This document shows, piece by piece, positions 8,594-40,470 of a stretch of 64,000 nt of DNA (its first letter is position 1; each line of letters opens with the position of its first letter). The stretch is from IMG/VR virus record IMGVR_UViG_3300032242_003291, positions 186,001 through 250,000 of that record, one strand, 5' to 3'. The notes beneath the pieces are model-generated. The model saw nothing but the letters and a program-made list of their open reading frames with translations. It made no database searches and was not told the origin of the DNA. The position numbers and the translations under genes were made by a program.

Positions 8594-9691
8594 ATGAATT
8601 TAAGAGAAAAAATATCAAAACTTATAAAAGAAGCATTAGGTATACCTGAAAACATTTATGAAACATCTGTTGATGTATACAATGAAGTCTTGAAACAACT
8701 TGACCAACCTCCTCATATAAAACGTGATGATGACGAAGTCAAATTATATTTTATGATTGAAAAGGGTTTGAGAATTTCGGATTTCTTATTACCAAGAATT
8801 TTAATGGAATTTACAATTCATGTTGATGAAGATTACAATGAATTTGAATTAGTTAGTATGAATGTTCAAAGTGAGACGGAAAGACCAACTGAAGACAACC
8901 CATCAAAACTCAAAAAGACAGAAGTTGAAGATTTGATTATAAATTCGGTATTTGTTGGTCCTGAGACTTTTGTTCTTGAAAATTTCAAAAATTTTTTAGT
9001 TTCAATCAAAAGTGAATTTGTATCTAGTGTTTCTCACGAATTGAAACACGCATATGACCACACCAAAGGGGAGTACGAATCAGTAGAATATAGAGCGGGT
9101 TATAATGCAATAGCAGGTAAGAAATTTAACATCAATTGTGTTGACCTATTTTTTCATGACTTGTATTATGTAATGGCTAGTGAAAATTTAGTTAGACCAA
9201 CAGAAATTGCATCTGCAATCAGAGAAAATAAAATCAGTCAAAAAGACTTTTTGAAGTTTTTAACTAATAGTACAACATATCAAAATCTAAAAAGAATCTC
9301 ACAATTCACATTAGAAGGTTTCAAAGATTGTTTAAGAAAAGAAATGAAATCAGTGGATAAATTCTTTTACCACGTAGGTGGTGGTGAAGGATTGAGTGAA
9401 GAAGAAAAAGTTAGTAAGATTATAGAATTAGTTTACATCAATTTGGTCAATTGGAAAATAGATGCTTTTAGAGAAATATTAACCTCAGAATTTATCGAGG
9501 AAATTTTAGGGTTCAGAGGTCAAAAAAAGAAAACACTCGATAACTTTATCAAAAAAACTTTGAGATTTGAAAAAAACCCTGAAGACTTTTTTAGATATGA
9601 AGAAAAGAATTTTAGGGATGTGGGAAACAAAATGATTAGAAAGATATCCAAACTACACTCTATCACTCATCCAAAATCCGTCGATAGTTAA
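8594..9691 (+). CDS. HExxH zincin-like protein
   Basis: VSHELKHAYD and downstream RPTE; N-terminal LIKE; TATTTAT at 8582-8588. Confidence 0.6.
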   Translation: MNLREKISKLIKEALGIPENIYETSVDVYNEVLKQLDQPPHIKRDDDEVKLYFMIEKGLRISDFLLPRILMEFTIHVDEDYNEFELVSMNVQSETERPTEDNPSKLKKTEVEDLIINSVFVGPETFVLENFKNFLVSIKSEFVSSVSHELKHAYDHTKGEYESVEYRAGYNAIAGKKFNINCVDLFFHDLYYVMASENLVRPTEIASAIRENKISQKDFLKFLTNSTTYQNLKRISQFTLEGFKDCLRKEMKSVDKFFYHVGGGEGLSEEEKVSKIIELVYINLVNWKIDAFREILTSEFIEEILGFRGQKKKTLDNFIKKTLRFEKNPEDFFRYEEKNFRDVGNKMIRKISKLHSITHPKSVDS

Positions 9692-10117
9692 ACTTTTACT
9701 TCCACATTTATTCAAACAATCTAAATAGTGTTTAACTATTAAATAACTAAAACCATGTCGGTCCTTCAGTGACCAATAATGTTTTGTGTCATTTATAATT
9801 CCTTCGATATAATATTCATAGTTTGTATTTCTACGCTGAATATTTTTTATCATAAGATAAGGATGTTTTCCAATCCAAGATTTCAAATAAATTTGATACT
9901 CATAATATTTTAATGTGAATACGTTAAAAAATTGATTAAAATATTTTTGATTATACCAAATATCTCCAGTACAAATTATTTCAAAATACCATTCTTTAGT
10001 ATCCAAATCAAGTAACCAAATAGAACGACCAACAGGATAGAATATCTTTCCACCTAATTCATCTGACAATCTTTGGAATATAATTTTTTTTAATCTTTCG
10101 TTTGCAGAGTCCACCAT
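9653..10117 (-). CDS. hypothetical protein (WF paralog family)
   Basis: FNVF...YLKSWIGKH motif. Confidence 0.7.
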   Translation of the reverse strand: MVDSANERLKKIIFQRLSDELGGKIFYPVGRSIWLLDLDTKEWYFEIICTGDIWYNQKYFNQFFNVFTLKYYEYQIYLKSWIGKHPYLMIKNIQRRNTNYEYYIEGIINDTKHYWSLKDRHGFSYLIVKHYLDCLNKCGSKSLTIDGFWMSDRV

Positions 10118-10139
10118 TTTAGAAATATAGTAAATTTCC

Positions 10140-10466
10140 TTAGTGTTTCCAAGTTGTAATTATATTACCATCGGGTCCCCACACAATAAAATTCATAATC
10201 GGCTTATTAATGTCAAAATACGGGAAGTACTGTTTGATATGATATTCAACCAAATAGTGTGGGTCAAAATCCTTATCATACATGTTTTCTTTGGTTATGG
10301 TCGGGTCATTTACAAATATATCAACTTCCAATCCTCCCCACCCTCTTGGGTTATATAAATCTGAATTATAACGAATATCGATATGGTCAACCATAGGATA
10401 AATATTTTTGATTGTACCTGAGTTGGCTAATTTCTCTAATCCTTTTACTTGAAAATCTTTAATCAT
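10140..10466 (-). CDS. hypothetical protein
   Basis: 108 aa in a tightly packed operon. Confidence 0.75.
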   Translation of the reverse strand: MIKDFQVKGLEKLANSGTIKNIYPMVDHIDIRYNSDLYNPRGWGGLEVDIFVNDPTITKENMYDKDFDPHYLVEYHIKQYFPYFDINKPIMNFIVWGPDGNIITTWKH

Positions 10467-10467
10467 G

Positions 10468-10842
10468 TTATTCTATGGTTTTCACAGGTAATTTGAAATT
10501 ATCAGTAAACCATTTCTTGAATGGTTCGTGCCATTTATCACCAAAATATCCATCTAATTTAATGTCGTATGGATGCTCAAGTTGTACTATTGGACAAAGT
10601 TCTTTAGCTTTACTTCCATCATCAAAATATTCACAACCATACCACATAAAACATCCATCTTCATCTCCATTATAATCTCCAATATAAAATAAAATTCTAC
10701 TTTCGTCATCACCTTCTTCACCTGTTTCATCATCTATTATGTCATAGGGATTGGTCCAATTAATATCATCAACATCAAATATATCATCGAGATATGTCAT
10801 GATTACACTTTCTAATTTGGACTCTGTGATTACGTATCTCAT
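10468..10842 (-). CDS. leader-bearing WF-family protein
   Basis: MRYVITESKL; LDGYFG...FKKWFTDNFKLPVK. Confidence 0.8.
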   Translation of the reverse strand: MRYVITESKLESVIMTYLDDIFDVDDINWTNPYDIIDDETGEEGDDESRILFYIGDYNGDEDGCFMWYGCEYFDDGSKAKELCPIVQLEHPYDIKLDGYFGDKWHEPFKKWFTDNFKLPVKTIE

Positions 10843-11441
10843 TATTTATTTTGACTTTTAATCTTTTCTAATGCTTTATTAACTTTCATCCACTGTTTTT
10901 CTCTTTCGGCTCTTTCAAGGTCTTTCTTTTCTTCTCTTTTTCTCCAATTGGCAAAACTATCAGGATTCATTTTTTCTCTTGCTATACGAATCAAATCATC
11001 CTTATTTTGTAATTTTGTTTCAATATCGGCAGTTCTTTTCTTAAACCCTTGTAAATCAAAATCAGGTTCTAATTTATCTTGACGTGTTGCGTGGTGGGGT
11101 TTTCTAACTTTTGCAGGTAAATCTCTTTCTTCACCATGTAATTTTTTGAATTTAATTCCGTACTTAGCAACTCCACTCTTTCCACCAAATTTATCAAAAA
11201 TCCATTTTGTAACATCTTCTCTTAAATCCTTGTCGGAACTAAAAAACAAATTGTCCTTTAATTCATTGAACGCATCCAAAGAAACAATACCACTTGTAGG
11301 TCCTAATTGAGCCATAAGTTTACCATTAACATAAATGTTTCTATGGTCTCCCTCATGTTTAATCTCATAACCATTAAACATATCTTCTAACATAGAAGAC
11401 ATCAATTCGTTGGCTTGTTGTTCTGTTATTATAATTTTCAT
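10842..11441 (-). CDS. leader-bearing WF-family protein with charged tail
   Basis: MKIIITEQQ; VTKWIFDKFG. Confidence 0.8.
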   Translation of the reverse strand: MKIIITEQQANELMSSMLEDMFNGYEIKHEGDHRNIYVNGKLMAQLGPTSGIVSLDAFNELKDNLFFSSDKDLREDVTKWIFDKFGGKSGVAKYGIKFKKLHGEERDLPAKVRKPHHATRQDKLEPDFDLQGFKKRTADIETKLQNKDDLIRIAREKMNPDSFANWRKREEKKDLERAEREKQWMKVNKALEKIKSQNK

Positions 11442-11442: not shown

Positions 11443-12036
11443 TTAAATCCCCCCTCTTTTTTTTCTGTTTTGACTATCTACAACATCTAAGTAAAGCTCG
11501 TCAAGGTCTGCTCCGCTTGATTTAATTCTATTTATAACCTCTTCTTTTGTATAAAGTGTATGTTTAACAATATATTCAATCATTTCTTCATCTGTAATTC
11601 CTTCAGGTTTAACAGGTTTATCAAGACAATCTTCTTCTCTTGCCAATACATCTATTTCATCCAAACCTAATCCTGATTCACCAGTAATTGCTTCAAATTT
11701 TGGTATCATTGTTTCATCATACCATTCTTCAATCACATGTAAAACATAGGAACGTCTAATACTTAATAACTTGGAAAGTTTATCAATAATTTTATGAGAT
11801 ATTGCTAAATACCCTTTTTCAAATCCATTATCCCCATAATAATAAATCGATTTAAGAGTTTCTTTACCATCAACACACCAAGTTTCACTTGAACTTACTC
11901 TATGACGAGTTTTGGCGGTTACTTTTCTTTTACCCTCACTGATATATTCATTCATATATTTGATGATGGCATTTGTAATACCTTGGCTACTTTTATTAAG
12001 TCTATTGTACTGACTTTCTGTTATGATAATTCTCAT
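11443..12036 (-). CDS. leader-bearing WF-family protein
   Basis: MRIIITESQY; VIEEWYDETM; TATTTAT at 12041-12047. Confidence 0.8.
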   Translation of the reverse strand: MRIIITESQYNRLNKSSQGITNAIIKYMNEYISEGKRKVTAKTRHRVSSSETWCVDGKETLKSIYYYGDNGFEKGYLAISHKIIDKLSKLLSIRRSYVLHVIEEWYDETMIPKFEAITGESGLGLDEIDVLAREEDCLDKPVKPEGITDEEMIEYIVKHTLYTKEEVINRIKSSGADLDELYLDVVDSQNRKKRGGI

Positions 12037-12054
12037 TATTATAAATACATCGTT

Positions 12055-12313: not shown

Positions 12314-13033
12314 TTATACCATATTTGAACCTTTGGATACTCCTAACGAAGCATATACAGGTTCTGCAATTGATTTTGCTTGATTAGCTATTTGTTTAAC
12401 TACATTTTCGTAACCGCTACCAGCATATCTTTGATTGTTTGAATTTGTAAAGTTATTCAATAAATCAGATGCTGTTTTACCAACCAAATAATTTTTGGCA
12501 ATTAAATCAAAATAAGTTTGAATACCGTCCTCAACTGAGGAATGATATACATTCTTTCCTGTATCCACGTTCCCAACATTAAATGGATTTTTGGTTCTAA
12601 TTGGTCTTGCATTTGGATTACTTGCAAATCCACCTTCAGTTGCAAGTTGAGCCAAAGCTAATTCAACAGGAACATATTTGTTAAATTTATTGTAAGTATT
12701 TTTTGCTGCACTTGCTAACATATCACCTGTAATCCCTAATAAGTTTGATGACCTTTTAGAAATGAAATTGTCTGCAATTGTTTTATATGCATCATATCCT
12801 TGGCTTGTATTCAAATCTAATGGTGTAAATGTCCCTGAGGTAGACAATCCAGCAGCACTTGATGTTGATGGCGTAGAGTTATCTTGTTTTTTATCAAGTC
12901 CTTTTAAGAATGATGACAAATAACTTGTAAAATCGTTAGGATTTTTATTTTGACCAAGTCCACCTAACATTTGACTGGCAAATAAGTTGGCTAATTCTTG
13001 TTCAGTTAATATTACTTTGAATTTTTTACCCAT
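12314..13033 (-). CDS. leader-bearing glucosaminidase/lysozyme-like cell-wall hydrolase
   Basis: MGKKFKVILTEQEL; ALAQLATEGGF...KNPFNVG...YFDLIAKNY...RYA; start re-assigned to 13033 (TATTTAT at 13038-13044). Confidence 0.75.
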   Translation of the reverse strand: MGKKFKVILTEQELANLFASQMLGGLGQNKNPNDFTSYLSSFLKGLDKKQDNSTPSTSSAAGLSTSGTFTPLDLNTSQGYDAYKTIADNFISKRSSNLLGITGDMLASAAKNTYNKFNKYVPVELALAQLATEGGFASNPNARPIRTKNPFNVGNVDTGKNVYHSSVEDGIQTYFDLIAKNYLVGKTASDLLNNFTNSNNQRYAGSGYENVVKQIANQAKSIAEPVYASLGVSKGSNMV

Positions 13034-13593: not shown

Positions 13594-14160
13594 CTAATAT
13601 CTACCAGTCAAATAAACCCACATAGTTTCTGGAATTCTTGTACAAGTGGTTTTGTGACCCTTATCATTTTCACAAGGGATGTTTGGTAGGGTCTTAATCA
13701 TGGCTCTCAATTCCTTAGGGGCCCCTTTTAATAATTTTAATACGTCGTTTTTGGGATAAACGTTTTCTCTATTATATTGCTCTTTGATAATATGTTCTTG
13801 TAGTTCATTATCTTCTTCATCACCATCGAAACTATATCCTGAAAAATCTAAAGAATCAATTTCCGCAATTTTCTTCAGTCCTTTAGCAACGAAGGCTTTC
13901 CTGAATGCATCTTTAGTTTGTTCATTATCAAGACCAAATAAATCTCTGATACTTCTGAATAACGAATGACCAATTAAAATATGATAACCCTCACCCTTTA
14001 CCCAATCAGCCTCAATACCATTATCGGCATCATGAGTTCCCTTTGGAAAAAAAGAAAATTCTTTATACTTCTTAAAACGAAAATCAAGATTATTCAACTT
14101 GTCTAATGCAAATTGAAAGGCTAAATTCTCTAATTGTTGTTCTTGTAATATTATTTTCAT
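13594..14160 (-). CDS. leader-bearing WF-family protein with extra C-terminal module
   Basis: MKIILQEQQL; IRDLFGLDN; internal LQE and IKE before the second module. Confidence 0.75.
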   Translation of the reverse strand: MKIILQEQQLENLAFQFALDKLNNLDFRFKKYKEFSFFPKGTHDADNGIEADWVKGEGYHILIGHSLFRSIRDLFGLDNEQTKDAFRKAFVAKGLKKIAEIDSLDFSGYSFDGDEEDNELQEHIIKEQYNRENVYPKNDVLKLLKGAPKELRAMIKTLPNIPCENDKGHKTTCTRIPETMWVYLTGRY

Positions 14161-14161: not shown

Positions 14162-14770
14162 TTAAAATCCGTTTTCCTCCGAACATGTGATTCTATAAAT
14201 ATCAAAAAGATATTCACCAAACCAATCTTTACACATTTCAACTAAACTATCATGAATATCATCATAATCTTCACTCTCAAACAAATCCTCATCAATAGTT
14301 AAAAAATTACTAACCGCATACTCTATAACATTATCGGCATAATCAAACTCATCACCAAAATCATCACATAATGTGGGATAATTAATCTCACCGTCTGTAA
14401 TAAATTTCCTCATATTTTCTTTGTTTGCTCTTCTTCTGAACCAAAGAGGTGCGTCGGATTCATCGAGAAACTTGTGTTTTGTTTTTTCAATTTGTCTCTT
14501 AATGCTGTATTCTATTCGTTTTTCTTGTTCTTCTTTATTTAATTGAATAAAATCTTCATCTCTCATCACATAAGCCATTTTTCTTTGTTCATCGTATTCG
14601 TAATTAACATAAATAAACTCTTCCTTACGATTCACAACACTATACTTAACAAGACGTCCATTAAAATTAAAGATTCCACCTTTAACATTACGTTCAGGGT
14701 CTTTGGCATGTCTTTTACGAGACGCATTTAACAATCTTTCGTATTGGTCTTCAGTTAAGATATATTTCAT
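14162..14770 (-). CDS. leader-bearing two-module protein
   Basis: MKYILTEDQY; LDE then WFRRR module; TATTTAT at 14776-14782. Confidence 0.8.
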   Translation of the reverse strand: MKYILTEDQYERLLNASRKRHAKDPERNVKGGIFNFNGRLVKYSVVNRKEEFIYVNYEYDEQRKMAYVMRDEDFIQLNKEEQEKRIEYSIKRQIEKTKHKFLDESDAPLWFRRRANKENMRKFITDGEINYPTLCDDFGDEFDYADNVIEYAVSNFLTIDEDLFESEDYDDIHDSLVEMCKDWFGEYLFDIYRITCSEENGF

Positions 14771-14785
14771 TAAAGATAAATACCT

Positions 14786-15865: not shown

Positions 15866-16732
15866 TTATGATTCTACTCTTAAATAATTAAGATTATAAC
15901 CCATTCCTTTTAATAACTCTTTAATATTTTCTTTTAATGGTCTTCTAGCACTATAAGAATCATCTTTATATGAAAATTCTATAAATCCACCTAAATTTTG
16001 AGTTCCAGGAGTAAATTTAATTGCATGTATTACTCTTTTAGCATCAGGAAGCTCTTTTATTTTTTTCTTAATTACTTTATTCAAATCATTTTTGACCCAT
16101 TCATCAAGTCCAATATATTCTACACTATGAAAACTAAAAATAAGTTGTCCATGAGTTGGGTTTCCAAGTTCAACCCCTAAAAAACCTTTTATTTTGTCAG
16201 TTAAGTCTTTGGAAATTTCATTCATCTTGTATTTTCTATTATCTTCGGATTTGATAAATCTTTCCCAATCAACTTCTAGTTTAGCATAAACTTTGAATGG
16301 TGAATCTTCGGTGATAACAATTTTCATAAATTCAGGTAAATCCAATTGTTCAATAAAAAACTCTAATGGTTTTTTATATCTCTCTGTAAATTTTTCTTGT
16401 GAACGAAGTGATGGTAATTTGTGTTTTCCTAATTCCACCAGTTTTCTTCCTATATTCGATGCATTTGTTAGACTATTTCTCCATGTAACCATAACGTCTT
16501 CAGCTCTCATTCCATTATCATTACAAAAATCTGAAATATATTTTTTTACTAAATAAGATAATGGGTATTCTCCTATTTCATCACCATGATTCTTTTTAAC
16601 CCATGGTCTAAAATAATGTAAGAATACCTCAACAAAATCTTCATCATCATAAATTTCATCATTGAAAGATTCAACAATCCGATTGATAACTTTGATAAGT
16701 TCAGATTCCGTAAGGGTTAATGTTTTTTTCAT
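15866..16732 (-). CDS. leader-bearing hypothetical protein
   Basis: MKKTLTLTESELIKVINRIVES; TATTTAT at 16738-16744. Confidence 0.8.
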   Translation of the reverse strand: MKKTLTLTESELIKVINRIVESFNDEIYDDEDFVEVFLHYFRPWVKKNHGDEIGEYPLSYLVKKYISDFCNDNGMRAEDVMVTWRNSLTNASNIGRKLVELGKHKLPSLRSQEKFTERYKKPLEFFIEQLDLPEFMKIVITEDSPFKVYAKLEVDWERFIKSEDNRKYKMNEISKDLTDKIKGFLGVELGNPTHGQLIFSFHSVEYIGLDEWVKNDLNKVIKKKIKELPDAKRVIHAIKFTPGTQNLGGFIEFSYKDDSYSARRPLKENIKELLKGMGYNLNYLRVES

Positions 16733-16915: not shown

Positions 16916-17299
16916 TTACCAACTTTGACGTTCTACGTGTTTCACAGGTAATCCCGTATGTTTTGTAAACCATCTTTTGAATAATTCTTGCCATCTTGGA
17001 CCAAAGTATCCATCAAGGGCATCATATTTTTTACTATCAATTGTAATCATAGGACATTTATGTTCAGGTAGGGGGTCCTCATTTGGGTTGTCACATAATG
17101 TATAAAACATATGTGGTTCATCACCATTACCTTCAAAATCTGGGTCAAAGAAAAAAAACATCTCATAGCTTGTATCCATTTCATCATGATAACTTTTTTT
17201 ATCTTCCCATCCTCCTCCTGGTACAAGATGACCATCAAAATATTTCAAGATTGTATCTATCAATTTATTATTTTGTTGCTCTGTTATAATGTATTTCAT
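16916..17299 (-). CDS. leader-bearing WF-family protein
   Basis: MKYIITEQQ; LDGYFG...FKRWFTKHTGLPVK; close paralog of 10468..10842. Confidence 0.8.
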   Translation of the reverse strand: MKYIITEQQNNKLIDTILKYFDGHLVPGGGWEDKKSYHDEMDTSYEMFFFFDPDFEGNGDEPHMFYTLCDNPNEDPLPEHKCPMITIDSKKYDALDGYFGPRWQELFKRWFTKHTGLPVKHVERQSW

Positions 17300-17605
17300 T
17301 TAATTATTCCAATTACTGTCACCCAACACACGAGTATTGGTTTTATCGAATACAACATTTATCCCTGTATAATCTTTAATTTTGGACCTCAATTTCATTT
17401 TAACTTGATGACTAAAGGCGGCTCTATTAATGTCATCCATACTACTCCACCACTCTTCAGGGACATAAAACACGGCATGTAATGTAAATTCACCTGGTGC
17501 CGTGTGACGTACGTCAAAGGCAACATGTTTTATTGGGTCAGGTAATATGTTTGGTAATAACTTTTCTAACGTTGATTCTACTTTGTCTTGGTCCATATTA
17601 TTCAA
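17300..17605 (-). CDS. hypothetical protein (Y-x-G family)
   Basis: LRSKIKDYTGINVVF. Confidence 0.7.
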   Translation of the reverse strand: MNNMDQDKVESTLEKLLPNILPDPIKHVAFDVRHTAPGEFTLHAVFYVPEEWWSSMDDINRAAFSHQVKMKLRSKIKDYTGINVVFDKTNTRVLGDSNWNN

Positions 17606-17912
17606 TTATTTGAAATGCAGAAATTACCATATCATCGGGGTAATGTTTATCAAACCACTTTTCCAATAGTTTTTCCGTTTCTCTTTTATCTAAACCAAAT
17701 AAGTTCATCATATGATGAAACAAATGTTCCTCAACACCCAAATGATAATCCATATAACGAAACATTGTTTTCATATCTTTATCAACAATCTCAAAATCTC
17801 CTTCTGTAGCATTGATGTGGTCTAAATCAACTTTTTTAAGTTCTCCGACAGTATCTTTAAGATATTTGTCAACGAAATCCACCAATCTATTTTCTGTTAT
17901 TAGATACTTCAT
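17598..17912 (-). CDS. leader-bearing WF-family protein
   Basis: MKYLITENRL; MNLFG...LEKWFDKHY; start re-assigned. Confidence 0.8.
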   Translation of the reverse strand: MKYLITENRLVDFVDKYLKDTVGELKKVDLDHINATEGDFEIVDKDMKTMFRYMDYHLGVEEHLFHHMMNLFGLDKRETEKLLEKWFDKHYPDDMVISAFQIIE

Positions 17913-17916: not shown

Positions 17917-18180
17917 TTATACTGCTGGGTCTTTATCGATAAATACAATAAAAATATCAATTCCCATATAGTTCATTATGTCACTTTTAATCTTCTCACG
18001 TATTTTAGTTTCATATTCTGACCTCAAATAATTTTCGGTTAATATAACAATAGTTAATTCTCCATGAGCTTCACCTAATATTAGTCTTGAAACTTTTGAT
18101 ATATTCTGACCTTTAATCACATCTATTATGTATGGTTCAAGTTTTTTATATTTTGATAAATCAGATTTTATTTTCATCAA
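17917..18180 (-). CDS. hypothetical protein (Y-x-G family)
   Basis: IKSDIMNYMGIDIFIVF. Confidence 0.7.
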   Translation of the reverse strand: MMKIKSDLSKYKKLEPYIIDVIKGQNISKVSRLILGEAHGELTIVILTENYLRSEYETKIREKIKSDIMNYMGIDIFIVFIDKDPAV

Positions 18181-18476
18181 TCTACTTTTTTCACTTCAAC
18201 ACCAAATTTATATTCAAAAAACTTTCCAACAAATACACTTGTCTCAATATAGCTTTTACCAAATAAATCCATTAAAGTTTTTCTAAACTCTTTTAGAAAC
18301 CACAATCTACCATCCTCACCGTCATATTCCATTTCAACTTCATTGTTCGCTTCTCCGTTACGATTTTCAAGGACAATAAATCTATCGAATTCAATAATTT
18401 CCTTAGCGTCAATCCACGAATTTATATAATCCGCCATTAACATATCTATCTTACTTTCTTTAATAATATATTTCAT
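18177..18476 (-). CDS. leader-bearing WF-family protein
   Basis: MKYIIKESKI; MDLFG...FFEYKFGVEVK. Confidence 0.8.
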   Translation of the reverse strand: MKYIIKESKIDMLMADYINSWIDAKEIIEFDRFIVLENRNGEANNEVEMEYDGEDGRLWFLKEFRKTLMDLFGKSYIETSVFVGKFFEYKFGVEVKKVD

Positions 18477-18478: not shown

Positions 18479-18832
18479 TTACATTCTGTCTACTGTTGTA
18501 CAATTTTCACCTGTAAAGTTATTATACCATTCTAAAAATAATGTACCAATGTGATTAAAATTAAAACCAAAAAGTCTTGAGACCGTATCCCACATTATTG
18601 GCCTTACTAAAAGCATTCTACCTTCTTCAGTTTCATCTTCCTCATCGTCATCAAAATTATAGGCTTCAAACATGGCATCAGATGGATGTTCATTTTTTCC
18701 TCGAACATATAATCTTGTCATATCTTCATATTCGTATCCTTCATCGGAAACCTCCCAATCATAAGAATCAAGATAATTAAAGACCATCTTCTTCATTTTT
18801 TCGTACTGAGATTCTGTTATAATGATTTTCAT
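18479..18832 (-). CDS. leader-bearing WF-family protein
   Basis: MKIIITESQY; SRLFG...FLEWYNNF. Confidence 0.8.
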   Translation of the reverse strand: MKIIITESQYEKMKKMVFNYLDSYDWEVSDEGYEYEDMTRLYVRGKNEHPSDAMFEAYNFDDDEEDETEEGRMLLVRPIMWDTVSRLFGFNFNHIGTLFLEWYNNFTGENCTTVDRM

Positions 18833-20083: not shown

Positions 20084-20386
20084 CTATATATAATGAACAA
20101 ACTTTCTTAAGTCTCTTACCTTTTTCATTTTATATTTGTCCCCAAACCAAGTTTTAATAAATTTTGCCGCATCATCTTCACTAACTGAAAACAAACCACT
20201 AATGGTACGACAAAGTGGTGGGTATCTATATAGTTTTATGAATTCCCAATCATCTTTTGTTCTGAACGAAAAAATATGAGTGTTATTGTTTGAATAAACG
20301 GCATAGTAATCGTGTTGACATTTTAATTTAACACCAGGGCCAACTACCTCCTCCAAAAAATTATAAATTATTTGTTCCATGAGCAC
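20084..20386 (-). CDS. WF-family protein without leader
   Basis: ISGLFS...FIKTWFGDKY. Confidence 0.75.
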   Translation of the reverse strand: MLMEQIIYNFLEEVVGPGVKLKCQHDYYAVYSNNNTHIFSFRTKDDWEFIKLYRYPPLCRTISGLFSVSEDDAAKFIKTWFGDKYKMKKVRDLRKFVHYI

Positions 20387-21146: not shown

Positions 21147-21956
21147 CTATAATTTTACTCCACCTTCAATAACCTTGCCAGCTTCAAACTCATCAGACCA
21201 ATCATACTCTCCCGAATTTTGGTCAGGATAGATATTCTTTATACCTTCTTCAATAACCATCCATATGTCCGTAGTGTTTGCACTACAGCCTGGGTCATAA
21301 TAAAATCTATCCATTCCCTGAGCAGGAACAACCACACGGTGAGGTTTAACATCCTTAACGATTCTTGGTATTAAATTCTGTGCTCTCATCTGCCTATGAG
21401 TTGAACTTGAATCATATACTTCTTTAAGACCATAATTCATCACATTACGAACATTAAATTCAGCATTACTATTCAATCCTTCAACTCCCTTAACACCGTT
21501 ACCAATCACAGCTCGAGTATGCCATTCGAATTCATCACCATGATTTTTACCGTGTTGTCCAATCTTTTTTATTCCCTCATCAACAACCTTATCAATATAA
21601 TCCTTACCCAATGCTCGTGTACTACTAACATTCTTTATTCCATTTTCGAGAACATTCGGGGTTTCGTTTCTACCTTTATCACGAGGATATGCAATCGTAC
21701 GATGAGCGCAGTCCTTATAGAAGAAATCATTAGCCCACTGTATAATATACCCATCCATTTCGGTTCCAACAGTTATTGAAACATATTTGAATATATCGTT
21801 GAAGAACTTATAGTTATACCATAAGGTCCCCTCATCGGTCAACTCAACAACCCATCTTGTTTGATTTGTAAAGATTAACCATGTGGCATTTTTCCACCGA
21901 TAAACATCTACTCCTTTAATTGAAGAAGTTATAAGCTCATTGACAATTTTTTGCAT
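21147..21956 (-). CDS. early WF-family domain fused to short tandem repeats
   Basis: -7 TATCTTTG at 21961-21968; repeated V-[IL]-x-x-G-[IV]-K units. Confidence 0.75.
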   Translation of the reverse strand: MQKIVNELITSSIKGVDVYRWKNATWLIFTNQTRWVVELTDEGTLWYNYKFFNDIFKYVSITVGTEMDGYIIQWANDFFYKDCAHRTIAYPRDKGRNETPNVLENGIKNVSSTRALGKDYIDKVVDEGIKKIGQHGKNHGDEFEWHTRAVIGNGVKGVEGLNSNAEFNVRNVMNYGLKEVYDSSSTHRQMRAQNLIPRIVKDVKPHRVVVPAQGMDRFYYDPGCSANTTDIWMVIEEGIKNIYPDQNSGEYDWSDEFEAGKVIEGGVKL

Positions 21957-21985
21957 AACACAAAGATACAAAAATATTTTGATAT

Positions 21986-22011
21986 AAAAAACCCACCTTA
22001 AGGGTGGGATT
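21986..22011 (-). terminator. intrinsic terminator
   Basis: aaaaacccacc-ttaag-ggtggg. Confidence 0.75.
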
Positions 22012-22285
22012 ATATTTTATCTACTGCTTTTGTAAACTTGTGACATTTTTCGGATACACCTCCTTCTTCATGGTCAGTAATGGATAATTTTACATTATCA
22101 TAATGAACGGTCATATCAGGATGGTGATTTTGTTTATCTGCAATTTTCATTACCGAATTAACAAATGGCATAACCTCTTTATAGTCTTTGAAATAGAATG
22201 TTTTAATAAGTTTATTACCACTTTCTTTCCAATCACTTTTATTCATAATTGTTCTTTTTTGTTGTTCTGTGATAATATATTTCAT
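22010..22285 (-). CDS. pterin-4-alpha-carbinolamine dehydratase (PhhB-like) with N-terminal leader
   Basis: W..SGNKLIKTFYFKDY..VMPFVN.V...ADKQNHHPD...ITDH..GGVSE; MKYIITEQQ leader. Confidence 0.85.
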   Translation of the reverse strand: MKYIITEQQKRTIMNKSDWKESGNKLIKTFYFKDYKEVMPFVNSVMKIADKQNHHPDMTVHYDNVKLSITDHEEGGVSEKCHKFTKAVDKI

Positions 22286-26757: not shown

Positions 26758-27057
26758 TTACTGATGCCCATATACACCATCAGTTTCAAGAACATCTTCA
26801 TTAAGTGTGTGAGCAACCCATCTCTTCATATACCAATCAACTTCTTCCACACTAAGAGAAAACATATCCATAATTGCAACCTGAATATGTTGCATATAGT
26901 TAAATTGTTTGCGGGCATAAATTAATGCGCCGACAACATAAAAATTATCATGATATAGAATAAGGTGGTTATTCTGAAGTGCAGTTTTATAATCACCGAA
27001 CCTATCCGTTATGAACTGTAGTATCAACTTTTCCATGAATTTTTTCATTTCCTCCAA
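26758..27057 (-). CDS. WF-family protein without leader
   Basis: IMDMFS...YMKRWVAHTL. Confidence 0.7.
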   Translation of the reverse strand: MEEMKKFMEKLILQFITDRFGDYKTALQNNHLILYHDNFYVVGALIYARKQFNYMQHIQVAIMDMFSLSVEEVDWYMKRWVAHTLNEDVLETDGVYGHQ

Positions 27058-33387: not shown

Positions 33388-33421
33388 GTGTATAAGTATA
33401 CTTACGGAACACATAAAAATA

Positions 33422-33551
33422 AAGTTATCCACAGGTGGGGAATGGTCCTGACGATATGACAGGGTGGAAAAAAAGTTGGGGATGTGGATAACTTTGGGGG
33501 TAAAATATTTGGATTTGTCAGAATGTCAGGGGACCGTTACGATGGGGATAA
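33422..33551. other. second inverted DnaA-box pair
   Basis: TTATCCACA at 33425-33433 (+) and 33483-33491 (-); TTATCCCCA at 33543-33551 (-). Confidence 0.6.
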
Positions 33552-34161: not shown

Positions 34162-34446
34162 ATGAGAAGATTGATATGGGAGTTCCTTAATATGAAGTAT
34201 AAAGATATTGTAATATATCATCAGGTCTTTGACCTTGATAACAGACGCACTGAAAAGTTTGTCACTGAAAGTTATCAGAGCATTATGGAATTTACTTATT
34301 TCTATAGTGGCAAAGATGTAAGGACTCATATAACTCCTGATATTAGAAAAAATATACAGAACTATTTCTGTGTTAATGCTTTAGATGTTGAATCATATAT
34401 TCTTGAATGGTGCCGTGATAAAAGTTATAAGACTATTGAAATGTAA
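34162..34446 (+). CDS. early WF-family protein without leader
   Basis: -7 TACCTTTG at 34149-34156; IQNYF...YILEWCRDK. Confidence 0.7.
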   Translation: MRRLIWEFLNMKYKDIVIYHQVFDLDNRRTEKFVTESYQSIMEFTYFYSGKDVRTHITPDIRKNIQNYFCVNALDVESYILEWCRDKSYKTIEM

Positions 34447-34862: not shown

Positions 34863-35183
34863 ATGAAGATAATCATCACAGAAGAACAATACGACAAAAT
34901 CATTAGTCAGAAATCTCTTTTTTGGATTAAGAGAAGAATTGATTTGGTTAAAGACGGATTGAAAGAAACCTTTGAACTTATGGAGTATGATATTTGTCGA
35001 ATCGATGATTATTATAAGTTTGAAAAGAAATTCTTCTCTGTATTAATGGATGGTCTTCATCCATATTTTTATGATGATGAAAGTTTTGACCACGCAGAAT
35101 ATGATGCTATGTATAATACATTAAAGGATTTATACTATGTTGAGTGTACCGAGTTTTATTTTGACGGTAGAGAACGCTGCTAA
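34863..35183 (+). CDS. leader-bearing WxKRR-module protein
   Basis: MKIIITEEQY; FWIKRR; TATTTAT at 34852-34858. Confidence 0.8.
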   Translation: MKIIITEEQYDKIISQKSLFWIKRRIDLVKDGLKETFELMEYDICRIDDYYKFEKKFFSVLMDGLHPYFYDDESFDHAEYDAMYNTLKDLYYVECTEFYFDGRERC

Positions 35184-35187: not shown

Positions 35188-35219
35188 TTTGATTCTCACA
35201 CCCTTTTTTCATACCTTTG
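35188..35219 (+). promoter_or_regulatory. Bacteroidota primary-sigma promoter
   Basis: TTTG-N20-TACCTTTG. Confidence 0.8.
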
Positions 35220-35235
35220 TATTGTGGAAAAACTT

Positions 35236-35538
35236 ATGCATTTATATCTGAAAACAATTTATCCTAAAGCTTATGTTTATAAATCTAAGTTTGGTTCCCT
35301 TATTTATAATATGGATGAATCTACTAGCTTTTGTTTGAAGTTTAATACTAAATTTCACATTAACAAAAAACCAGTTGTGAATCAATTGATTCACCTATTT
35401 TGTTGTGACGAAAATGTTGCTGAAAATGTTTATTATAATTGGTTTGAAAGTCTCCCCGTATATGTTATGGGTAAAAACTTAACTTGTGAAGATGTTCTTG
35501 TACCATTGGTAACTGAATGTAATTCTACTGTCAGTTAA
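35236..35538 (+). CDS. early WF-family protein without leader
   Basis: LIHLF...VYYNWFES. Confidence 0.7.
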   Translation: MHLYLKTIYPKAYVYKSKFGSLIYNMDESTSFCLKFNTKFHINKKPVVNQLIHLFCCDENVAENVYYNWFESLPVYVMGKNLTCEDVLVPLVTECNSTVS

Positions 35539-36383: not shown

Positions 36384-37124
36384 ATGAATTATAAAGCCGT
36401 TGTAATGTCTGACCTTCATTTGGGTATGAAGGACTGCAAACCACAAAAGATATTGGACTTCTTGGATTCTATGAGGACCGACATCTTAATATTAAATGGA
36501 GACGTTATCGACTTTGATGCTCTTCGCAGAGGAAGCAAATGGAAAAATAAACATACAAAAGTTATTACCAAGATATTAGATATTTCTCGTCATGTTCCCG
36601 TGGTTTATATTCGCGGGAACCATGATGATGATATCCGTGAGTTCTTCGGAATGGAAATTGGTAACATACAATTTACAGATGAATATATTATTGATACTAA
36701 AGAATGGGTTGAAAATGATGTCTATCACAATAGAAGATATCTTGTTTTTCACGGTGACCAAATTGATGTCACATCCAAGTTCAAACTACTTACTCAGATT
36801 GGCTCTGTGGGCTACGACCTGGCTCTAAGATTGAATACAATCTATAACCGTTACAGAGAATGGAGAAAACTTCCTTATTATTCCATATCAAAAAGGATTA
36901 AAGAAAACTTTAAGAAAGCATTGAGCTTCATTAATAACTTTGAAGATAATGCCGTTCAGTATGGTAAAAGAAAAGGATGTAATGGTGTGATATGTGGGCA
37001 CATACATATTCCTGTGATGAAAGAAATTAACGGAGTTAACTATTATAACTCAGGTGATTGGGTTGAAAACTTTACAGCAGTTGTTCTTACTACAGATTAC
37101 AAATGGGAGTTAATTCATTTATAA
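36384..37124 (+). CDS. LpxH-like metallophosphoesterase (UDP-2,3-diacylglucosamine diphosphatase family)
   Basis: SDLHLG, NGDVID, RGNHD, FHGD, CGHIH, NSGDWVE. Confidence 0.85.
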   Translation: MNYKAVVMSDLHLGMKDCKPQKILDFLDSMRTDILILNGDVIDFDALRRGSKWKNKHTKVITKILDISRHVPVVYIRGNHDDDIREFFGMEIGNIQFTDEYIIDTKEWVENDVYHNRRYLVFHGDQIDVTSKFKLLTQIGSVGYDLALRLNTIYNRYREWRKLPYYSISKRIKENFKKALSFINNFEDNAVQYGKRKGCNGVICGHIHIPVMKEINGVNYYNSGDWVENFTAVVLTTDYKWELIHL

Positions 37125-38556: not shown

Positions 38557-39499
38557 TTGTAATATATGATTTGATTTTGAACACTTCCCTAAATTGATTA
38601 TCGAATGCTTTTTCATAAATAACTTTTTGTGAGTTATCAACTCTTACGTGATTGATATCATCAAAAATTCCCAAAGGTCTTATGTGCCAGTGGTAAGGTT
38701 TTGTTGTTATGTTAACAATTGTAGATTTATTTACAATTACAACAATTTCTTCAGAGGTGTCTTTCACGGATTTATAAAAAATGTTCAATGTTTTGTCTGA
38801 TGGATTATAGTACAAAGTGAAATGGACCCCCCTATGAAAAACTTTATCTCCCCTTTGAAATTTATCTTCCAAAGGTTCATCTTTGAATAATATTTTTCCC
38901 GAGTTTAATAGAAGGTTTTTTGTGAAATGCTCTAATTGGGTTTCTTTCATTTTTTTCATTTCTCTTTCAATATATTCCTTGTCATAATTTTTTATTTTTT
39001 CAGGTAAAGAACTTACTTTCATAGACTTGAAAGAACCAAAAAGAAACCCGTCTTCTTGCCCATTATTAGTATAAATTACAGAATCATACCTTTCTAAAAA
39101 ATTACTATTTTCGTCAACTAAATTTTTATCTAACAGCAAACAATCATACTCGATATGATGAATATTTTGATATCCAAAATTTATTGCTATTTGGCAAGCA
39201 ATCGATAACATTCTATAAATCGCAAATCCATAAAAATATTTATTAAAAAATCTTGATTTTATTTTTGAATTTCCAAATTCGAAATACATGTAGCCTAACA
39301 AATCATAATCCTCTGAAATTTCATTTTTATAATCATAAACATAATAATGACATTTTTTTTGAATATGAATTGGAACATGCGAATGAGAAACTAACGCAAT
39401 ATGTTTACCACATTCTAAAACAGAATTAATACATTTTTCTAAAATTATTTCTTGTTCTTCTGTTGGACAATAAGCAGAAATAAAAATTAAATCTTTCAT
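38549..39499 (-). CDS. hypothetical glycan-modification protein (GT-like N-terminus)
   Basis: IALVSHS, HHIEYDC; TATTTAT at 39509-39515. Confidence 0.6.
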   Translation of the reverse strand: MKDLIFISAYCPTEEQEIILEKCINSVLECGKHIALVSHSHVPIHIQKKCHYYVYDYKNEISEDYDLLGYMYFEFGNSKIKSRFFNKYFYGFAIYRMLSIACQIAINFGYQNIHHIEYDCLLLDKNLVDENSNFLERYDSVIYTNNGQEDGFLFGSFKSMKVSSLPEKIKNYDKEYIEREMKKMKETQLEHFTKNLLLNSGKILFKDEPLEDKFQRGDKVFHRGVHFTLYYNPSDKTLNIFYKSVKDTSEEIVVIVNKSTIVNITTKPYHWHIRPLGIFDDINHVRVDNSQKVIYEKAFDNQFREVFKIKSYITSA

Positions 39500-39566
39500 T
39501 CCCCAAAAATAAATAAAAATAGTTTTTAATCAATAAAATGTTTTACCCTAAAAAGTATTTATTAAT

Positions 39567-39884
39567 ATGGACTATATTATGAACCAAAGACAACTTGATA
39601 AGTTGATGAAACCATATTGGGATATGCATTTTAATGATGCATACTTTGGTAAAGTTAATTTGAGTGGTGAAGATTGGGTAGGTTTGATTAAAAAAGATTC
39701 TAAAGGTATTCCTGAATTATTGTTGGGACATCCTGAAGATAGAGAAGAAATGATGTGGTATTGTAATGGACCAACTTTTAATGGTGGACATACACTTTTT
39801 AGTATTAAGCGTAGTGCATTTAATGAATCTATGAAAAGATATGTTAAGGATAGATTTAACATTACAACAAAAGATATTATGTAA
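39567..39884 (+). CDS. WF-family protein with degenerate leader
   Basis: MDYIMNQRQL; TLFS...MKRYVKDRF; TATTTAT at 39556-39562. Confidence 0.7.
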   Translation: MDYIMNQRQLDKLMKPYWDMHFNDAYFGKVNLSGEDWVGLIKKDSKGIPELLLGHPEDREEMMWYCNGPTFNGGHTLFSIKRSAFNESMKRYVKDRFNITTKDIM

Positions 39885-40139
39885 CTACTTCTTTTTTACC
39901 TTAACACAATTTGGGTATCTCTTTCCGAACATTGTCTTCATCCCCTTTTGAGTATATCCTTTCCAACATCTCTCAGTTATTTCTGATTCATTATTCTCAT
40001 GTTTGAAGTGTTCGTGGTCGGGCTCCATTTCGAATGCTGGTGCTGCGTAAGCCCCAACGCCTTCTTTTTCTTCTTGTTCTTTCGAAGGTAAATTGTTCTC
40101 AATGTGTTCCCTGAGTATTTTTTTGATAAGTTGTCTCAC
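39885..40139 (-). CDS. leader-bearing multi-module small protein
   Basis: MRQLIKKILREH; ITE then RCWKGYTQKGMKTMFGKRYPNCVK; TATTTAT at 40144-40150. Confidence 0.8.
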   Translation of the reverse strand: MRQLIKKILREHIENNLPSKEQEEKEGVGAYAAPAFEMEPDHEHFKHENNESEITERCWKGYTQKGMKTMFGKRYPNCVKVKKK

Positions 40140-40167
40140 AATAATAAATATCCTATATTTGAATTAG

Positions 40168-40470
40168 ATGGAAAGATTAATCAATTCTTTTTTGGAAACT
40201 AAATACACTGATAAACTCCGTATTAAAACTAGATATATTACTGAAGGTATAAAGTGTATTGAATATAATATATCATCAGGTTATGATGATATAATAACTG
40301 TTTATCTTTATTCCGAACACCAAAAAGGTTTTAAGGTTTTTGGTCCTTTAGCTAAAGAATTGGAATCATGGTTCGATATTAAATTTAGAGGGAAAGTAGA
40401 AGAGCTTGTATTCTCTTGGTGTAAAACCAAAATAGATTTTAATAATAAAAACCTAGAATATTTTGTATAG
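40168..40470 (+). CDS. WF-family protein without leader
   Basis: LESWF...LVFSWCKTK. Confidence 0.7.
   Translation: MERLINSFLETKYTDKLRIKTRYITEGIKCIEYNISSGYDDIITVYLYSEHQKGFKVFGPLAKELESWFDIKFRGKVEELVFSWCKTKIDFNNKNLEYFV

What the first reader, a model, noticed from the sequence alone, without database searches (positions are those of the whole stretch)
9653..40470. A 16-member divergent paralog family deployed both as early genes and as leader-tagged cargo
Seen: a ~100-aa domain ending [LM]F-[GS]-x8-10-[FIL]xxW[FY]xxx[FY] recurs in 9653, 10468, 10842, 11443, 13594, 16916, 17598, 18177, 18479, 20084, 21147, 26758, 34162, 35236, 39567 and 40168. The copies at 10468 and 16916 are clearly close. Copies behind host-sigma elements (21147, 34162, 35236) lack the leader, while many others have it. 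Inference: one scaffold diversified against a variable host target, with leader gain or loss switching between early expression and pre-loading. Remote members are assigned by eye.
Basis: partly seen in the sequence, partly recalled or inferred. Interest (0 to 1): 0.72.

Follow-up and report, generated by a model that had tools for sequence, protein, structure and literature searches.

The report
Leader-tagged paralog family in jumbo phage
A 317-kb T4-like freshwater phage carries at least 13 diverged copies of a previously undescribed ~85-residue protein domain, about half of them behind a 7-residue N-terminal tag (MKYIITE) that looks like the T4 signal for loading proteins into the capsid, so the phage probably delivers one protein scaffold both pre-packed in the virion and made early from host-type promoters.

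Summary
A profile built without the leader, starting from orthologues of the 17598 gene, converged with no decoy hits. 10842 is weak. Leader-stripped profile-profile comparison agrees (88-100% to the two hub profiles; controls at most 18%). AlphaFold2 gives a confident alpha/beta fold (pLDDT 92.5) with no match in PDB, Pfam or PHROGs. The family has 2,221 clusters in metagenomes.

The leader M-K-Y-I-I-T-E is separable from the domain. It also heads unrelated proteins, including a pterin-4a-dehydratase-like one, and is conserved at the amino-acid level, not the codon level. Genome-wide it occurs only in this 25-kb stretch. It ends in I-T-E, the tripeptide before the cleavage point of T4 IPI. 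The genome encodes a gp21-type prohead protease, and its capsid protein keeps an I-N-E|A site aligned with T4's.

Leader genes sit behind the TATTTAT motif shared with head genes. Five leaderless copies sit behind TAnnTTTG (Bacteroidota-type) boxes.

Best reading (about 0.6): T4-style capsid-targeted internal proteins plus early-expressed leaderless paralogues. Packaging, cleavage and the host target are not shown. Gene-wide dN/dS is below 1.

The parts
17598..17912 (-). Family member, 104 aa, leader MKYLITE. This is the hub sequence and the one modelled.
   Evidence: HMM E 3e-21. AF2 pLDDT 92.5, pTM 0.82: coil 1-6, then H-E-E-E-E-H-H-E. 83 orthologue clusters at 55-100% identity.
18177..18476 (-). 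Family member, 99 aa, leader MKYIIKE.
   Evidence: HMM E 6e-16. hhalign 100% to 17598.
18479..18832 (-). Family member, 117 aa, leader MKIIITE, acidic insert.
   Evidence: HMM E 8e-8. hhalign 96-99% to 17598, 18177 and 16916. Domain charge about -16.
16916..17299 (-). Family member, 127 aa, leader MKYIITE. Close paralogue of 10468.
   Evidence: blastp E 1e-13 and 32% identity to 10468. HMM E 3e-13.
10468..10842 (-). Family member, 124 aa, leader MRYVITE, very acidic.
   Evidence: HMM E 8e-13. Domain charge about -20.
11443..12036 (-). Family member, 197 aa, leader MRIIITE. Domain at about residues 12-98, plus a C-terminal extension. TATTTAT box 11 nt upstream.
   Evidence: HMM E 1e-13. hhalign 95-96% to the hubs. 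Motif at 12041-12047.
13594..14160 (-). Family member, 188 aa, leader MKIILQE, with a C-terminal extension.
   Evidence: HMM E 1e-6. hhalign 96-98% to the hubs.
20084..20380 (-). Family member, 98 aa, leaderless, lies inside an operon.
   Evidence: HMM E 3e-15. hhalign 98% to the hubs.
21147..21956 (-). Family member, 269 aa, leaderless. N-terminal domain plus a repeat-bearing C-terminal extension. TATCTTTG box 12 nt upstream, just after a terminator hairpin.
   Evidence: HMM E 1.5e-11. phmmer E 1e-6 to 9653. Motif at 21961-21968.
9653..10117 (-). Family member, 154 aa, leaderless, with a C-terminal extension.
   Evidence: HMM E 2.5e-10. hhalign 97% to the hubs and 100% to 21147.
26758..27048 (-). 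Family member, 96 aa, leaderless. TAAATTTG box 14 nt upstream.
   Evidence: HMM E 2.6e-9. hhalign 96% and 88% to the hubs. Motif at 27055-27062.
34162..34446 (+). Family member, 94 aa, leaderless. TACCTTTG box 13 nt upstream.
   Evidence: HMM E 7e-9. hhalign 97% to the family profile. Motif at 34149-34156.
39567..39884 (+). Family member, 105 aa, degenerate leader MDYIMNQ. TATTTAT box 11 nt upstream.
   Evidence: HMM E 3e-8. hhalign 96% to the family profile. Motif at 39556-39562.
40168..40470 (+). Probable family member, 100 aa, leaderless. TATATTTG box 14 nt upstream.
   Evidence: HMM E 0.012 over the full length. phmmer E 3e-4 to 34162. hhalign 85% to 34162 and 73% to the family profile. 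Motif at 40154-40161.
35224..35538 (+). Likely starts at GTG 35224. TACCTTTG box 12 nt upstream.
   Evidence: HMM E 0.004. hhalign 77% to the family profile, but only over the two C-terminal helices. AF2 uninformative, pLDDT 46. Motif at 35212-35219.
10842..11441 (-). Leader-tagged protein (MKIIITE), 199 aa. Membership of the domain family is doubtful.
   Evidence: Leader-stripped HMM E 0.75. hhalign 60-76% to the hubs and 43% to the family profile. Matches at 8.8e-7 only when the leader columns are included.
22010..22285 (-). Leader (MKYIITE) fused to an unrelated domain: pterin-4a-carbinolamine dehydratase (PCD/DCoH)-like, 91 aa.
   Evidence: Pfam PF01329 E 9e-20 over residues 7-90. hhalign 0% to the family.
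22847..24286 (-). Leader (MKIIVTE) on a 479-aa protein with no recognised domain. TATTTAT box 12 nt upstream.
14162..14770 (-). Leader (MKYILTE) on a 202-aa non-family protein. TATTTAT box 12 nt upstream.
   Evidence: (0-1%).
34863..35183 (+). Leader (MKIIITE) on a 106-aa non-family protein. TATTTAT box 11 nt upstream.
12314..13033 (-). Leader-like N-terminus (MGKKFKVILTE) on a 239-aa protein of unknown family. TATTTAT box 11 nt upstream.
15866..16732 (-). Leader-like N-terminus (MKKTLTLTE) on a 288-aa protein. TATTTAT box 12 nt upstream.

Best explanation
The window lies in a 317-kb T4-like jumbo myovirus from freshwater metagenomes; its promoter boxes suggest a Bacteroidota host. It holds a 30-kb accessory region built from two independent modules.

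Module 1 is a previously undescribed ~85-residue alpha/beta domain (helix, four strands, two helices, strand). Only its hydrophobic core is conserved, so it looks like a non-enzymatic binding scaffold. It is present in 13 secure and up to 16 copies.

Module 2 is a 7-residue N-terminal leader, consensus M-K-Y-I-I-T-E. I read it as a T4-type capsid-targeting propeptide. On this reading, leader-tagged proteins are made late with the head proteins and bind the scaffolding core of the prohead. The gp21-type prohead protease cuts them after the glutamate (I-T-E|S/N). They stay in the filled head and enter the host with the DNA. Leaderless paralogues are instead transcribed from host-type promoters early after infection and supply the same kind of activity from inside the cell.

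Shown here: the homology of the copies; the modularity and amino-acid-level conservation of the leader; the presence of the protease; the conserved cleavage site in the capsid protein; and the two promoter-like motif classes.

Inferred: packaging, cleavage, injection, expression timing, and that the scaffold binds host (defence or take-over) targets.
For: Family:
- hhalign matrix with controls at or below 18%.
- Confident AF2 model in which residues 1-6 are coil (the first ten residues average pLDDT 74) ahead of helix 1.
- 2,221 clusters in the 1.84-billion-protein library.

Leader as a separable tag:
- 13 ORFs in the genome carry it, all within window 10.4-35.2 kb.
- 241 non-identical leader ORFs occur in 62 related loci; 144 of the 227 domain hits carry it.
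- It sits in a fixed register 12 residues before HMM position 1.
- It is also fused to a Pterin_4a domain and to other non-family proteins.
- Its codons vary synonymously, so selection acts on the peptide.

Protease logic:
- A PF03420 gp21-type protease and a PF07068 capsid protein are present.
- The capsid protein's S-F-L-I-N-E60|A aligns with T4 S-F-L-T-E65|A. T4 removes 65 residues there (PMC9958956).
- The T4 IPI propeptide ends I-T-E, IPII and IPIII end I-A-E, and Alt starts M-E-L-I-T-E. The 10-residue T4 CTS is sufficient for packaging (PMC9026906).
- This phage's own protease starts M-K-N-L-R-I-L-E.
- Five related jumbo genomes all have the protease and 3-11 leader patterns, against 0 for the reversed control pattern.

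Timing:
- TATTTAT lies within 45 nt upstream of 76 of 380 genes (1.3% background), including the protease, scaffold and portal genes and seven leader or leader-like genes at -11/-12.
- TAnnTTTG lies at -12 to -14 before five leaderless copies.

Weak support: metagenomic multi-domain relatives carry I-[TSN]-E in the linkers between domain copies.
Against: - No direct evidence of packaging or cleavage exists; no virion proteome, isolate or RNA data are available.
- The leader has no sequence homology with the T4 CTS beyond format. At 7 residues it is shorter than the 10-19-residue IP propeptides.
- [IL]-x-E is a short motif and common by chance.
- The domains are mostly acidic (median pI 4.7), whereas to my knowledge the abundant T4 internal proteins are basic.
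- Across related loci the leader and late-motif association is only a trend.
- The promoter classes are inferred from motif enrichment and position, not from mapped transcripts.
- Gene-wide dN/dS is below 1, so there is no sign of an ongoing arms race.
- The structure-based test of protease with substrate gave no answer.
Confidence: 0.6

Rival explanations
1. The proteins are packaged through the leader as proposed, but they are structural or physical head contents (an inner-body-like or DNA-organising mass, or scaffold accessories needed for a 317-kb genome). They would not be host-directed effectors, and the leaderless copies would serve unrelated roles.
For: Large paralogue families of internal head proteins are documented in giant phages, for example the 20-member family B and the processed family A of SPN3US (PMC5694885). 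Orthologues here are under ordinary purifying selection. No conserved polar or catalytic residues are present.
Against: Acidic 10-kDa domains are odd DNA-condensing agents. The existence of leaderless, apparently early-promoter paralogues argues that the domain acts in the infected cell, not only inside the head. Copy number and membership vary between related phages.
Confidence: 0.2
2. The leader is not a targeting or cleavage signal. It is an N-terminal element kept for expression or folding, for example a favourable A/U-rich start for the near-leaderless late mRNAs implied by boxes only 11-12 nt from the ATG, or a cap for helix 1. On this view the proteins are ordinary intracellular late proteins.
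For: Both promoter-like boxes sit 11-14 nt from start codons and no Shine-Dalgarno sequences are visible, so coding-sequence starts could matter for translation. All leader codons are A/T-rich.
Against: Other genes behind the same late box, including head genes, lack the leader. Conservation is residue-specific (T6 and E7 dominate at a fixed register) while codons vary. The leader is coil with lower confidence, not part of the fold. Leaderless members fold into the same domain family. The leader is confined to one accessory region. Its end matches the protease site format also kept in the capsid protein.
Confidence: 0.15
3. The family is an artefact of eye-matching low-complexity, A/T-rich coding sequence. 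On this view the ORFs are not homologous.
For: Pairwise identities are 11-30% and most pairwise BLAST or phmmer E-values are not significant. The literal motif matches only 2 ORFs.
Against: The iterative profile drew no reversed or shuffled decoy and no other genome ORF. Profile-profile probabilities are 80-100% against at most 18% for neighbouring genes. The fold prediction from the family alignment is confident. BFVD and ESM Atlas hits are to the same kind of phage proteins.
Confidence: 0.02

Closest known systems
T4 internal proteins IPI, IPII, IPIII and Alt with their capsid targeting sequence (CTS)
   Same: A short N-terminal propeptide is shared by otherwise unrelated small proteins. It ends in [I/L]-x-E before the cut (T4 IPI ends I-T-E; IPII and IPIII end I-A-E). 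A gp21-type prohead protease and a T4-type capsid protein with a conserved cleavage site are present. The genes lie in a variable accessory region. The precedent is that such cargo counters host defence (IPI* against GmrSD; PMC3012670, PMC9026906).
   Different: The leader sequence differs and is shorter (7 against 10-19 residues). The cargo domain is unrelated to IPI, IPII or IPIII (hhalign at or below 2%; no PDB fold match). There are 10-15 tagged genes rather than 3-4. Most cargo is acidic. Leaderless paralogues lie behind host-type promoters, which to my knowledge has not been described for T4 internal proteins. Packaging is not demonstrated here.
Paralogue families of head, inner-body or ejection proteins in phiKZ-like giant phages (SPN3US families A and B; phiKZ gp93/94/95/162/163)
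   Same: Many diverged paralogues of internal head proteins occur in a jumbo phage. Their numbers vary between relatives. Some share identical N-terminal propeptides removed by a gp21-related protease after glutamate (PMC5694885).
   Different: The phage lineage is different (T4-type, not phiKZ-type). There is no Pfam match, including to the pfam12699 family named for those proteins. Those propeptides are often over 100 residues and use A/S/G-x-E sites. Here the tag is 7 residues with I-x-E.
Uncharacterised proteins of 'uncultured Caudovirales phage' in BFVD (A0A6J5L9Q5 and ten neighbours in accession) and three viral clusters of the ESM Atlas
   Same: Same predicted fold: TM 0.55-0.74 in BFVD and above 0.9 in the Atlas. 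The BFVD hits are eleven entries with neighbouring accessions.
   Different: None of these has a name, function or publication that I could find. They are further members, not an explanation.

Membership tests
T4-type CTS-tagged internal (capsid-delivered) proteins | A short N-terminal propeptide shared by proteins whose mature parts are unrelated. | tested here: met
   The leader sits on the domain family and also on Pterin_4a-like and other non-family proteins. It keeps a fixed register.
T4-type CTS-tagged internal (capsid-delivered) proteins | The propeptide ends in the prohead-protease site [L/I]-x-E. | tested here: met
   The consensus ends I-T-E, with variants I-S-E, I-K-E and L-Q-E. The T4 IPI propeptide ends I-T-E; IPII and IPIII end I-A-E.
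T4-type CTS-tagged internal (capsid-delivered) proteins | The genome encodes a gp21-family prohead protease and a T4-type head whose capsid protein is cut at such a site. | tested here: met
   PF03420 E 1e-22 and PF07068 E 3e-62. I-N-E60|A aligns with T4 L-T-E65|A. Five relatives also carry the protease.
T4-type CTS-tagged internal (capsid-delivered) proteins | Expressed together with head proteins (late). | tested here: inconclusive
   The TATTTAT box is shared with head genes and lies at -11/-12 before seven leader or leader-like genes. No transcript data exist.
T4-type CTS-tagged internal (capsid-delivered) proteins | Physically present in virions in processed form and injected with the DNA. 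| not testable with these tools
   No isolate carries the family and no proteome is available. The complex prediction gave no answer.
T4 IPI / IPII / IPIII protein families (homology of the mature protein) | Sequence or fold similarity of the mature domain. | tested here: not met
Any curated protein family (Pfam-A, PHROGs), including the giant-phage head paralogue family pfam12699 | A match above threshold. | tested here: not met
   94 members were scanned. Only isolated sub-threshold hits appeared, and no family was shared by more than one member. The PDB sequence profile search gave nothing below E 0.1.

The most novel reading that the evidence does not exclude
A clade of freshwater jumbo T4-like phages uses a minimal 7-residue capsid-loading tag (M-K-Y-I-I-T-E, cut after E). 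The tag can be swapped on and off a new, highly expandable binding scaffold. The same anti-host module is then delivered either pre-packed with the DNA, acting before any phage gene is expressed, or from host-type early promoters. This would be a two-channel deployment of one counter-defence or take-over family, with repeated switching between channels during evolution.
Probability: 0.35. Interest if true: 0.75.

Novelty: new variant of a known kind. Interest (0 to 1): 0.6.

Why it matters
If the reading holds, it extends the T4 capsid-targeting principle, known from a few coliphage proteins, to a distant lineage of uncultured jumbo phages with a shorter tag and ten or more cargo genes. It would define a large protein family that is absent from Pfam, PHROGs and the PDB (2,221 clusters at 50% identity). 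It would give a concrete case in which one scaffold is routed either into the virion or to early expression. That makes an open question directly testable: how phages cover the first minutes of infection against host defences. The tag could also serve as a small packaging handle for phage engineering in Bacteroidota-type systems. The practical limit is that no cultured phage carrying the family was found.

Tried and rejected
- The literal motif regex matches only 2 of the 16 ORFs, so I replaced it with profiles.
- Single-sequence BLAST and phmmer link only a few pairs.
- Pfam, PHROGs and a PDB sequence profile search found nothing.
- AF2 of 35236 with 11 orthologues failed (pLDDT 46) and cannot decide its membership.
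- The complex prediction of the gp21 homologue with the 17598 protein returned 'no answer'. It counts neither for nor against.
- Gene-wide dN/dS showed no positive selection. dS is 0.4-2.3, so it is partly saturated.
- I suspected that the small genes interleaved with the family (10140, 12055, 14786, 17300, 17917) form one second family. Only 17300, 14786 and part of 17917 are linked.
- An NCLDV origin, prompted by a related contig labelled GVMAG, is rejected: no NCLDV capsid was found but a T4 gp23-type capsid was.
- A nucleotide-level recombination or regulatory element in the leader is rejected because synonymous codons vary.
- The nearest cultured relatives by capsid protein (Flavobacterium phage immuto, Microcystis phage Mel-JY01) lack the family, and a positive control on the window's own genome worked.
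- tblastn of 17598 against 50,697 phage genomes found nothing.
- Only DNA metagenome runs hold the sequence, so I did not lay reads.
- The GC-rich stretch at 32.5-34.2 kb has no tRNA or Rfam match.

Full report
**Context**

The window is bases 186,001-250,000 of a 317,259-bp IMG/VR virus record with about 31% G+C. The genome encodes a T4 gp23-type major capsid protein (PF07068, E 3e-62) and a gp21-type prohead protease (PF03420, E 1e-22). No NCLDV capsid was found. It is therefore a T4-like jumbo myovirus.

The nearest cultured relatives by capsid protein are distant: Flavobacterium phage immuto at 41.6%, Microcystis phage Mel-JY01 at 42.5% and Rhodothermus phage RM378 at 37%. The sequence is held only by freshwater and lake DNA metagenomes. 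Start codons lack Shine-Dalgarno sequences, and many genes are preceded by TAnnTTTG, the form of the Bacteroidota -7 promoter box as I know it. A Bacteroidota host is therefore likely but not shown.

**Is the family real?**

Pairwise searches are weak. Only 10468/16916 (E 1e-13), 9653/21147 (about 1e-6) and 34162/40168 (3e-4) stand out.

I collected relatives in two steps. The first was 83 orthologue clusters of the 17598 protein. The second was 62 loci from other IMG/VR jumbo-phage contigs, fetched with the orthologue alignment.

To keep the shared leader from driving the result, I removed the first nine alignment columns. I then iterated hmmbuild and hmmsearch against all ORFs of the loci and of the whole genome, together with reversed and shuffled copies of every ORF. 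The search converged at 227 proteins with no decoy accepted in 12 rounds.

| ORF | E-value |
|---|---|
| 17598 | 3e-21 |
| 18177 | 6e-16 |
| 20084 | 3e-15 |
| 11443 | 1e-13 |
| 16916 | 3e-13 |
| 10468 | 8e-13 |
| 21147 | 1.5e-11 |
| 9653 | 2.5e-10 |
| 26758 | 2.6e-9 |
| 34162 | 7e-9 |
| 39567 | 3e-8 |
| 18479 | 8e-8 |
| 13594 | 1e-6 |
| 35236 | 0.004 |
| 40168 | 0.012 |
| 10842 | 0.75 |

Nothing else in 317 kb scores better than 0.03.

Leader-stripped profile-profile comparison gives 88-100% probability between the two deep hub profiles (17598, 18177) and ten others, counting 94% and 80% for 34162. Seventeen neighbouring unrelated genes score 0-18%.

After adding their own orthologues, the remote members score as follows:
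- 40168 reaches 85% to 34162 and 73% to the family profile.
- 35236 reaches 77% to the family profile, but only over the two C-terminal helices.
- 10842 reaches 43%.

My tally is 13 secure members, 40168 probable, 35236 possible and 10842 doubtful as a domain member, although 10842 clearly carries the leader. The motif as literally written matches only two ORFs. Its positions are nevertheless the conserved core positions of the profile.

**What the domain is**

AlphaFold2 on a 94-sequence family alignment gives a confident model (pLDDT 92.5, pTM 0.82). Residues 1-6 are coil, followed by helix 7-22, four strands, helices 62-72 and 76-90, and a final strand.

Fold and family searches gave the following:
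- Foldseek against PDB found nothing below E 0.1.
- AFDB clusters gave only uncharacterised proteins.
- BFVD returned eleven uncharacterised proteins of 'uncultured Caudovirales phage' with neighbouring accessions.
- The ESM Atlas returned three purely viral hypothetical clusters at TM above 0.9.
- Pfam and PHROGs have no family for any of the 94 members.

A profile search of 1.84 billion representative proteins found 2,221 clusters at E 1e-3 or better and 717 at 1e-10 or better. Some of these proteins hold two to four copies of the domain.

All strongly conserved profile positions are hydrophobic, with W76 the strongest. No conserved polar residue is present. This fits a binding scaffold rather than an enzyme. 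The domains are mostly acidic: median pI is 4.7 with the leader and 5.3 without, and 10468 and 18479 carry about -20 and -16 net charge.

**The leader**

Genome-wide, 13 ORFs begin with M-[KR]-[IY..]-[IVL]-[IVL]-[TKQ]-E. All lie between window positions 10,468 and 35,183. In the related loci there are 241 non-identical ORFs of this kind, with consensus M-K-Y-I-I-T-E-S/N-Q/K/R-L.

A count that does not use the regular expression shows the leader in a fixed register: M at -12 and E at -6 relative to profile position 1. Of the 227 domain proteins, 144 carry it.

Several observations show it is a separable module:
- It also heads proteins with other domains. Window 22010 is a complete pterin-4a-carbinolamine-dehydratase-like domain behind M-K-Y-I-I-T-E (PF01329, E 9e-20).
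- 14162, 22847 and 34863 carry it but are not family members.
- Synonymous codons vary freely within the leader, so the conservation is on the peptide and not on a DNA or RNA element.
- On a tree of the 227 domains, the leader state needs at least 31 changes, against 60-75 for shuffled labels. It is clade-structured but was changed repeatedly. The tree of so short a domain is poorly resolved and cannot tell gain from loss.

**Why I read the leader as a capsid-targeting propeptide**

In T4, the first 10 residues of IPIII suffice to load foreign proteins into the prohead, and gp21 removes them (PMC9026906, section 2.6; PMC3012670). Internal proteins of T-even phages are diverse apart from this conserved sequence (PMC3012670).

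From the T4 record I read these N-termini:
- IPII and IPIII: M-K-T-Y-Q-E-F-I-A-E|A.
- IPI: a 19-residue N-terminus ending I-T-E|A, which leaves the 76-residue IPI*.
- Alt: starts M-E-L-I-T-E.
- gp24: starts M-A-K-I-N-E.
- gp21: starts M-N-E-P-Q-L-L-I-E.

The leader here ends in the same I-T-E. This phage's own protease begins M-K-N-L-R-I-L-E. Its capsid protein has S-F-L-I-N-E60|A-S aligned by BLASTP to T4 S-F-L-T-E65|A-E, the site where T4 removes 65 residues (PMC9958956). The site format recognised by the protease therefore appears to be conserved.

The scaffold-like protein between the protease and capsid genes has 14 [IL]-x-E sites against 7.6 expected, similar to T4 gp22 with 16 against 5.9. 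Five related genomes of 195-326 kb all carry the protease and 3-11 exact leader patterns, with none for the reversed control pattern. In several metagenomic multi-domain relatives the linkers between domain copies contain I-T-E, I-S-E, I-N-E or L-N-E. This is suggestive only, because the motif is short.

**Expression classes**

TATTTAT occurs within 45 nt upstream of 76 of 380 genes, against 1.3% of random 45-nt windows. It peaks at -11/-12 and at -19 to -24. It precedes the protease, scaffold, portal and many large structural genes. I take it to be the late promoter element, but it has not been mapped.

In the window it lies at -11/-12 before 11443, 12314, 14162, 15866, 22847, 34863 and 39567. 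These are all leader, leader-like or degenerate-leader genes. It lies further upstream of 13594 and 17598.

TAnnTTTG lies at -12 to -14 before 21147, 26758, 34162, 35236 (counted from GTG 35224) and 40168. All five are leaderless. That gives 7 to 0 against 0 to 5.

Across all related loci the association is weaker: 54 late to 12 early with the leader, and 17 to 10 without.

**Evolution**

Orthologues of each paralogue are conserved and syntenic in related phages. Nei-Gojobori dN/dS against two relatives is 0.09-0.46 for family members and 0.05-0.44 for neighbouring genes, with dS of 0.4-2.3. The duplications are old. There is no gene-wide signal of positive selection, and site-wise tests were not run.

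**Conclusion**

The best explanation (about 0.6) is a T4-style system of capsid-targeted internal proteins built on a new scaffold domain, with leaderless paralogues expressed early. The two main rivals are these:
- The packaged proteins are structural head contents rather than host-directed effectors (about 0.2).
- The leader serves expression or folding and not targeting (about 0.15).

Relative to what is known, this is a new variant of the CTS and internal-protein principle. It is also a parallel to the head paralogue families of phiKZ-like phages (PMC5694885). It is not a member of any described protein family. Packaging, cleavage, timing and target remain to be shown, and no cultured phage with the family was found.

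Noticed in passing
window 14786-15103, 17300-17596, 17917-18177 (all minus strand): A second, smaller paralogue family of leaderless ~90-100-aa proteins is interleaved with the leader genes. An iterative HMM links 17300 and 14786 (E 1e-24 to 1e-28) and part of 17917 (2e-6). 10140 and 12055 look similar by eye but are not linked. Their function is unknown, and they often directly follow a leader-tagged gene.
   Followed up: partly
window 13081-13566 (-): A cyclophilin-type peptidyl-prolyl isomerase (PF00160, E 4e-42) sits in the middle of the leader-gene cluster. It is conserved there in related phages (94% identity in L009). It has no leader. It might help fold cargo, but this is speculation.
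   Followed up: partly
window-wide; e.g. 12041-12047, 14776-14782, 21961-21968, 34149-34156: Both promoter-like boxes (TATTTAT and TAnnTTTG) peak only 11-14 nt upstream of start codons, and no Shine-Dalgarno sequences are seen. This implies leaderless or nearly leaderless mRNAs for many genes of this phage.
   Followed up: partly
window 32500-34160: This is the divergent switch region between the minus-strand and plus-strand gene blocks. It is G+C-rich (41% against 31%) and holds 7 of the window's 15 TCCCCAC/GTGGGGA copies (4.7 expected window-wide), plus several TAnnTTTG boxes. No tRNA or Rfam match was found. It could be an origin or a regulator-binding array.
   Followed up: partly
window 18896-20047 (-): A 383-aa glycine-rich protein with long GGxGG-type runs and no Pfam match. 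A TATTTAT-like box lies just upstream.
   Followed up: no
window 21147-21956 (-), residues ~95-269: The C-terminal extension of the leaderless member 21147 contains about six copies of a short x-G-[IVL]-K-x-[VI] motif spaced 25-45 residues apart. No family match was found.
   Followed up: no
window 35583-36281, 36384-37124, 43353-46868: These are sugar-related auxiliary genes: a family-2 glycosyltransferase, a calcineurin-like phosphoesterase, a UDP-galactopyranose mutase (PF03275, E 2e-76) and two further glycosyltransferases.
   Followed up: no
L004/L016 (IMGVR_UViG_GVMAG-S-3300010160-96_000001): An 18.7-kb contig filed under a giant-virus MAG label carries the same leader-gene cluster at 63-68% identity. 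It is evidently a fragment of a T4-like phage and not of a nucleocytoplasmic large DNA virus.
   Followed up: partly
proteins P0094, P0142, P0158, P0182, P0227 (metagenomic): These 500-800-aa proteins hold three or four copies of the domain. Their linkers carry I-T-E, I-S-E, I-N-E or L-N-E, as if they were polyproteins meant to be cut by the prohead protease. P0142 also matches Kyano_Gp96 (PF23790).
   Followed up: partly
L010 and L011 (related Logan contigs): The syntenic clusters of related phages include genes whose products hit Endonuclease_NS, TseH-like, Peptidase_C92 and Peptidase_C39 domains. I did not check whether these carry the leader.
   Followed up: no
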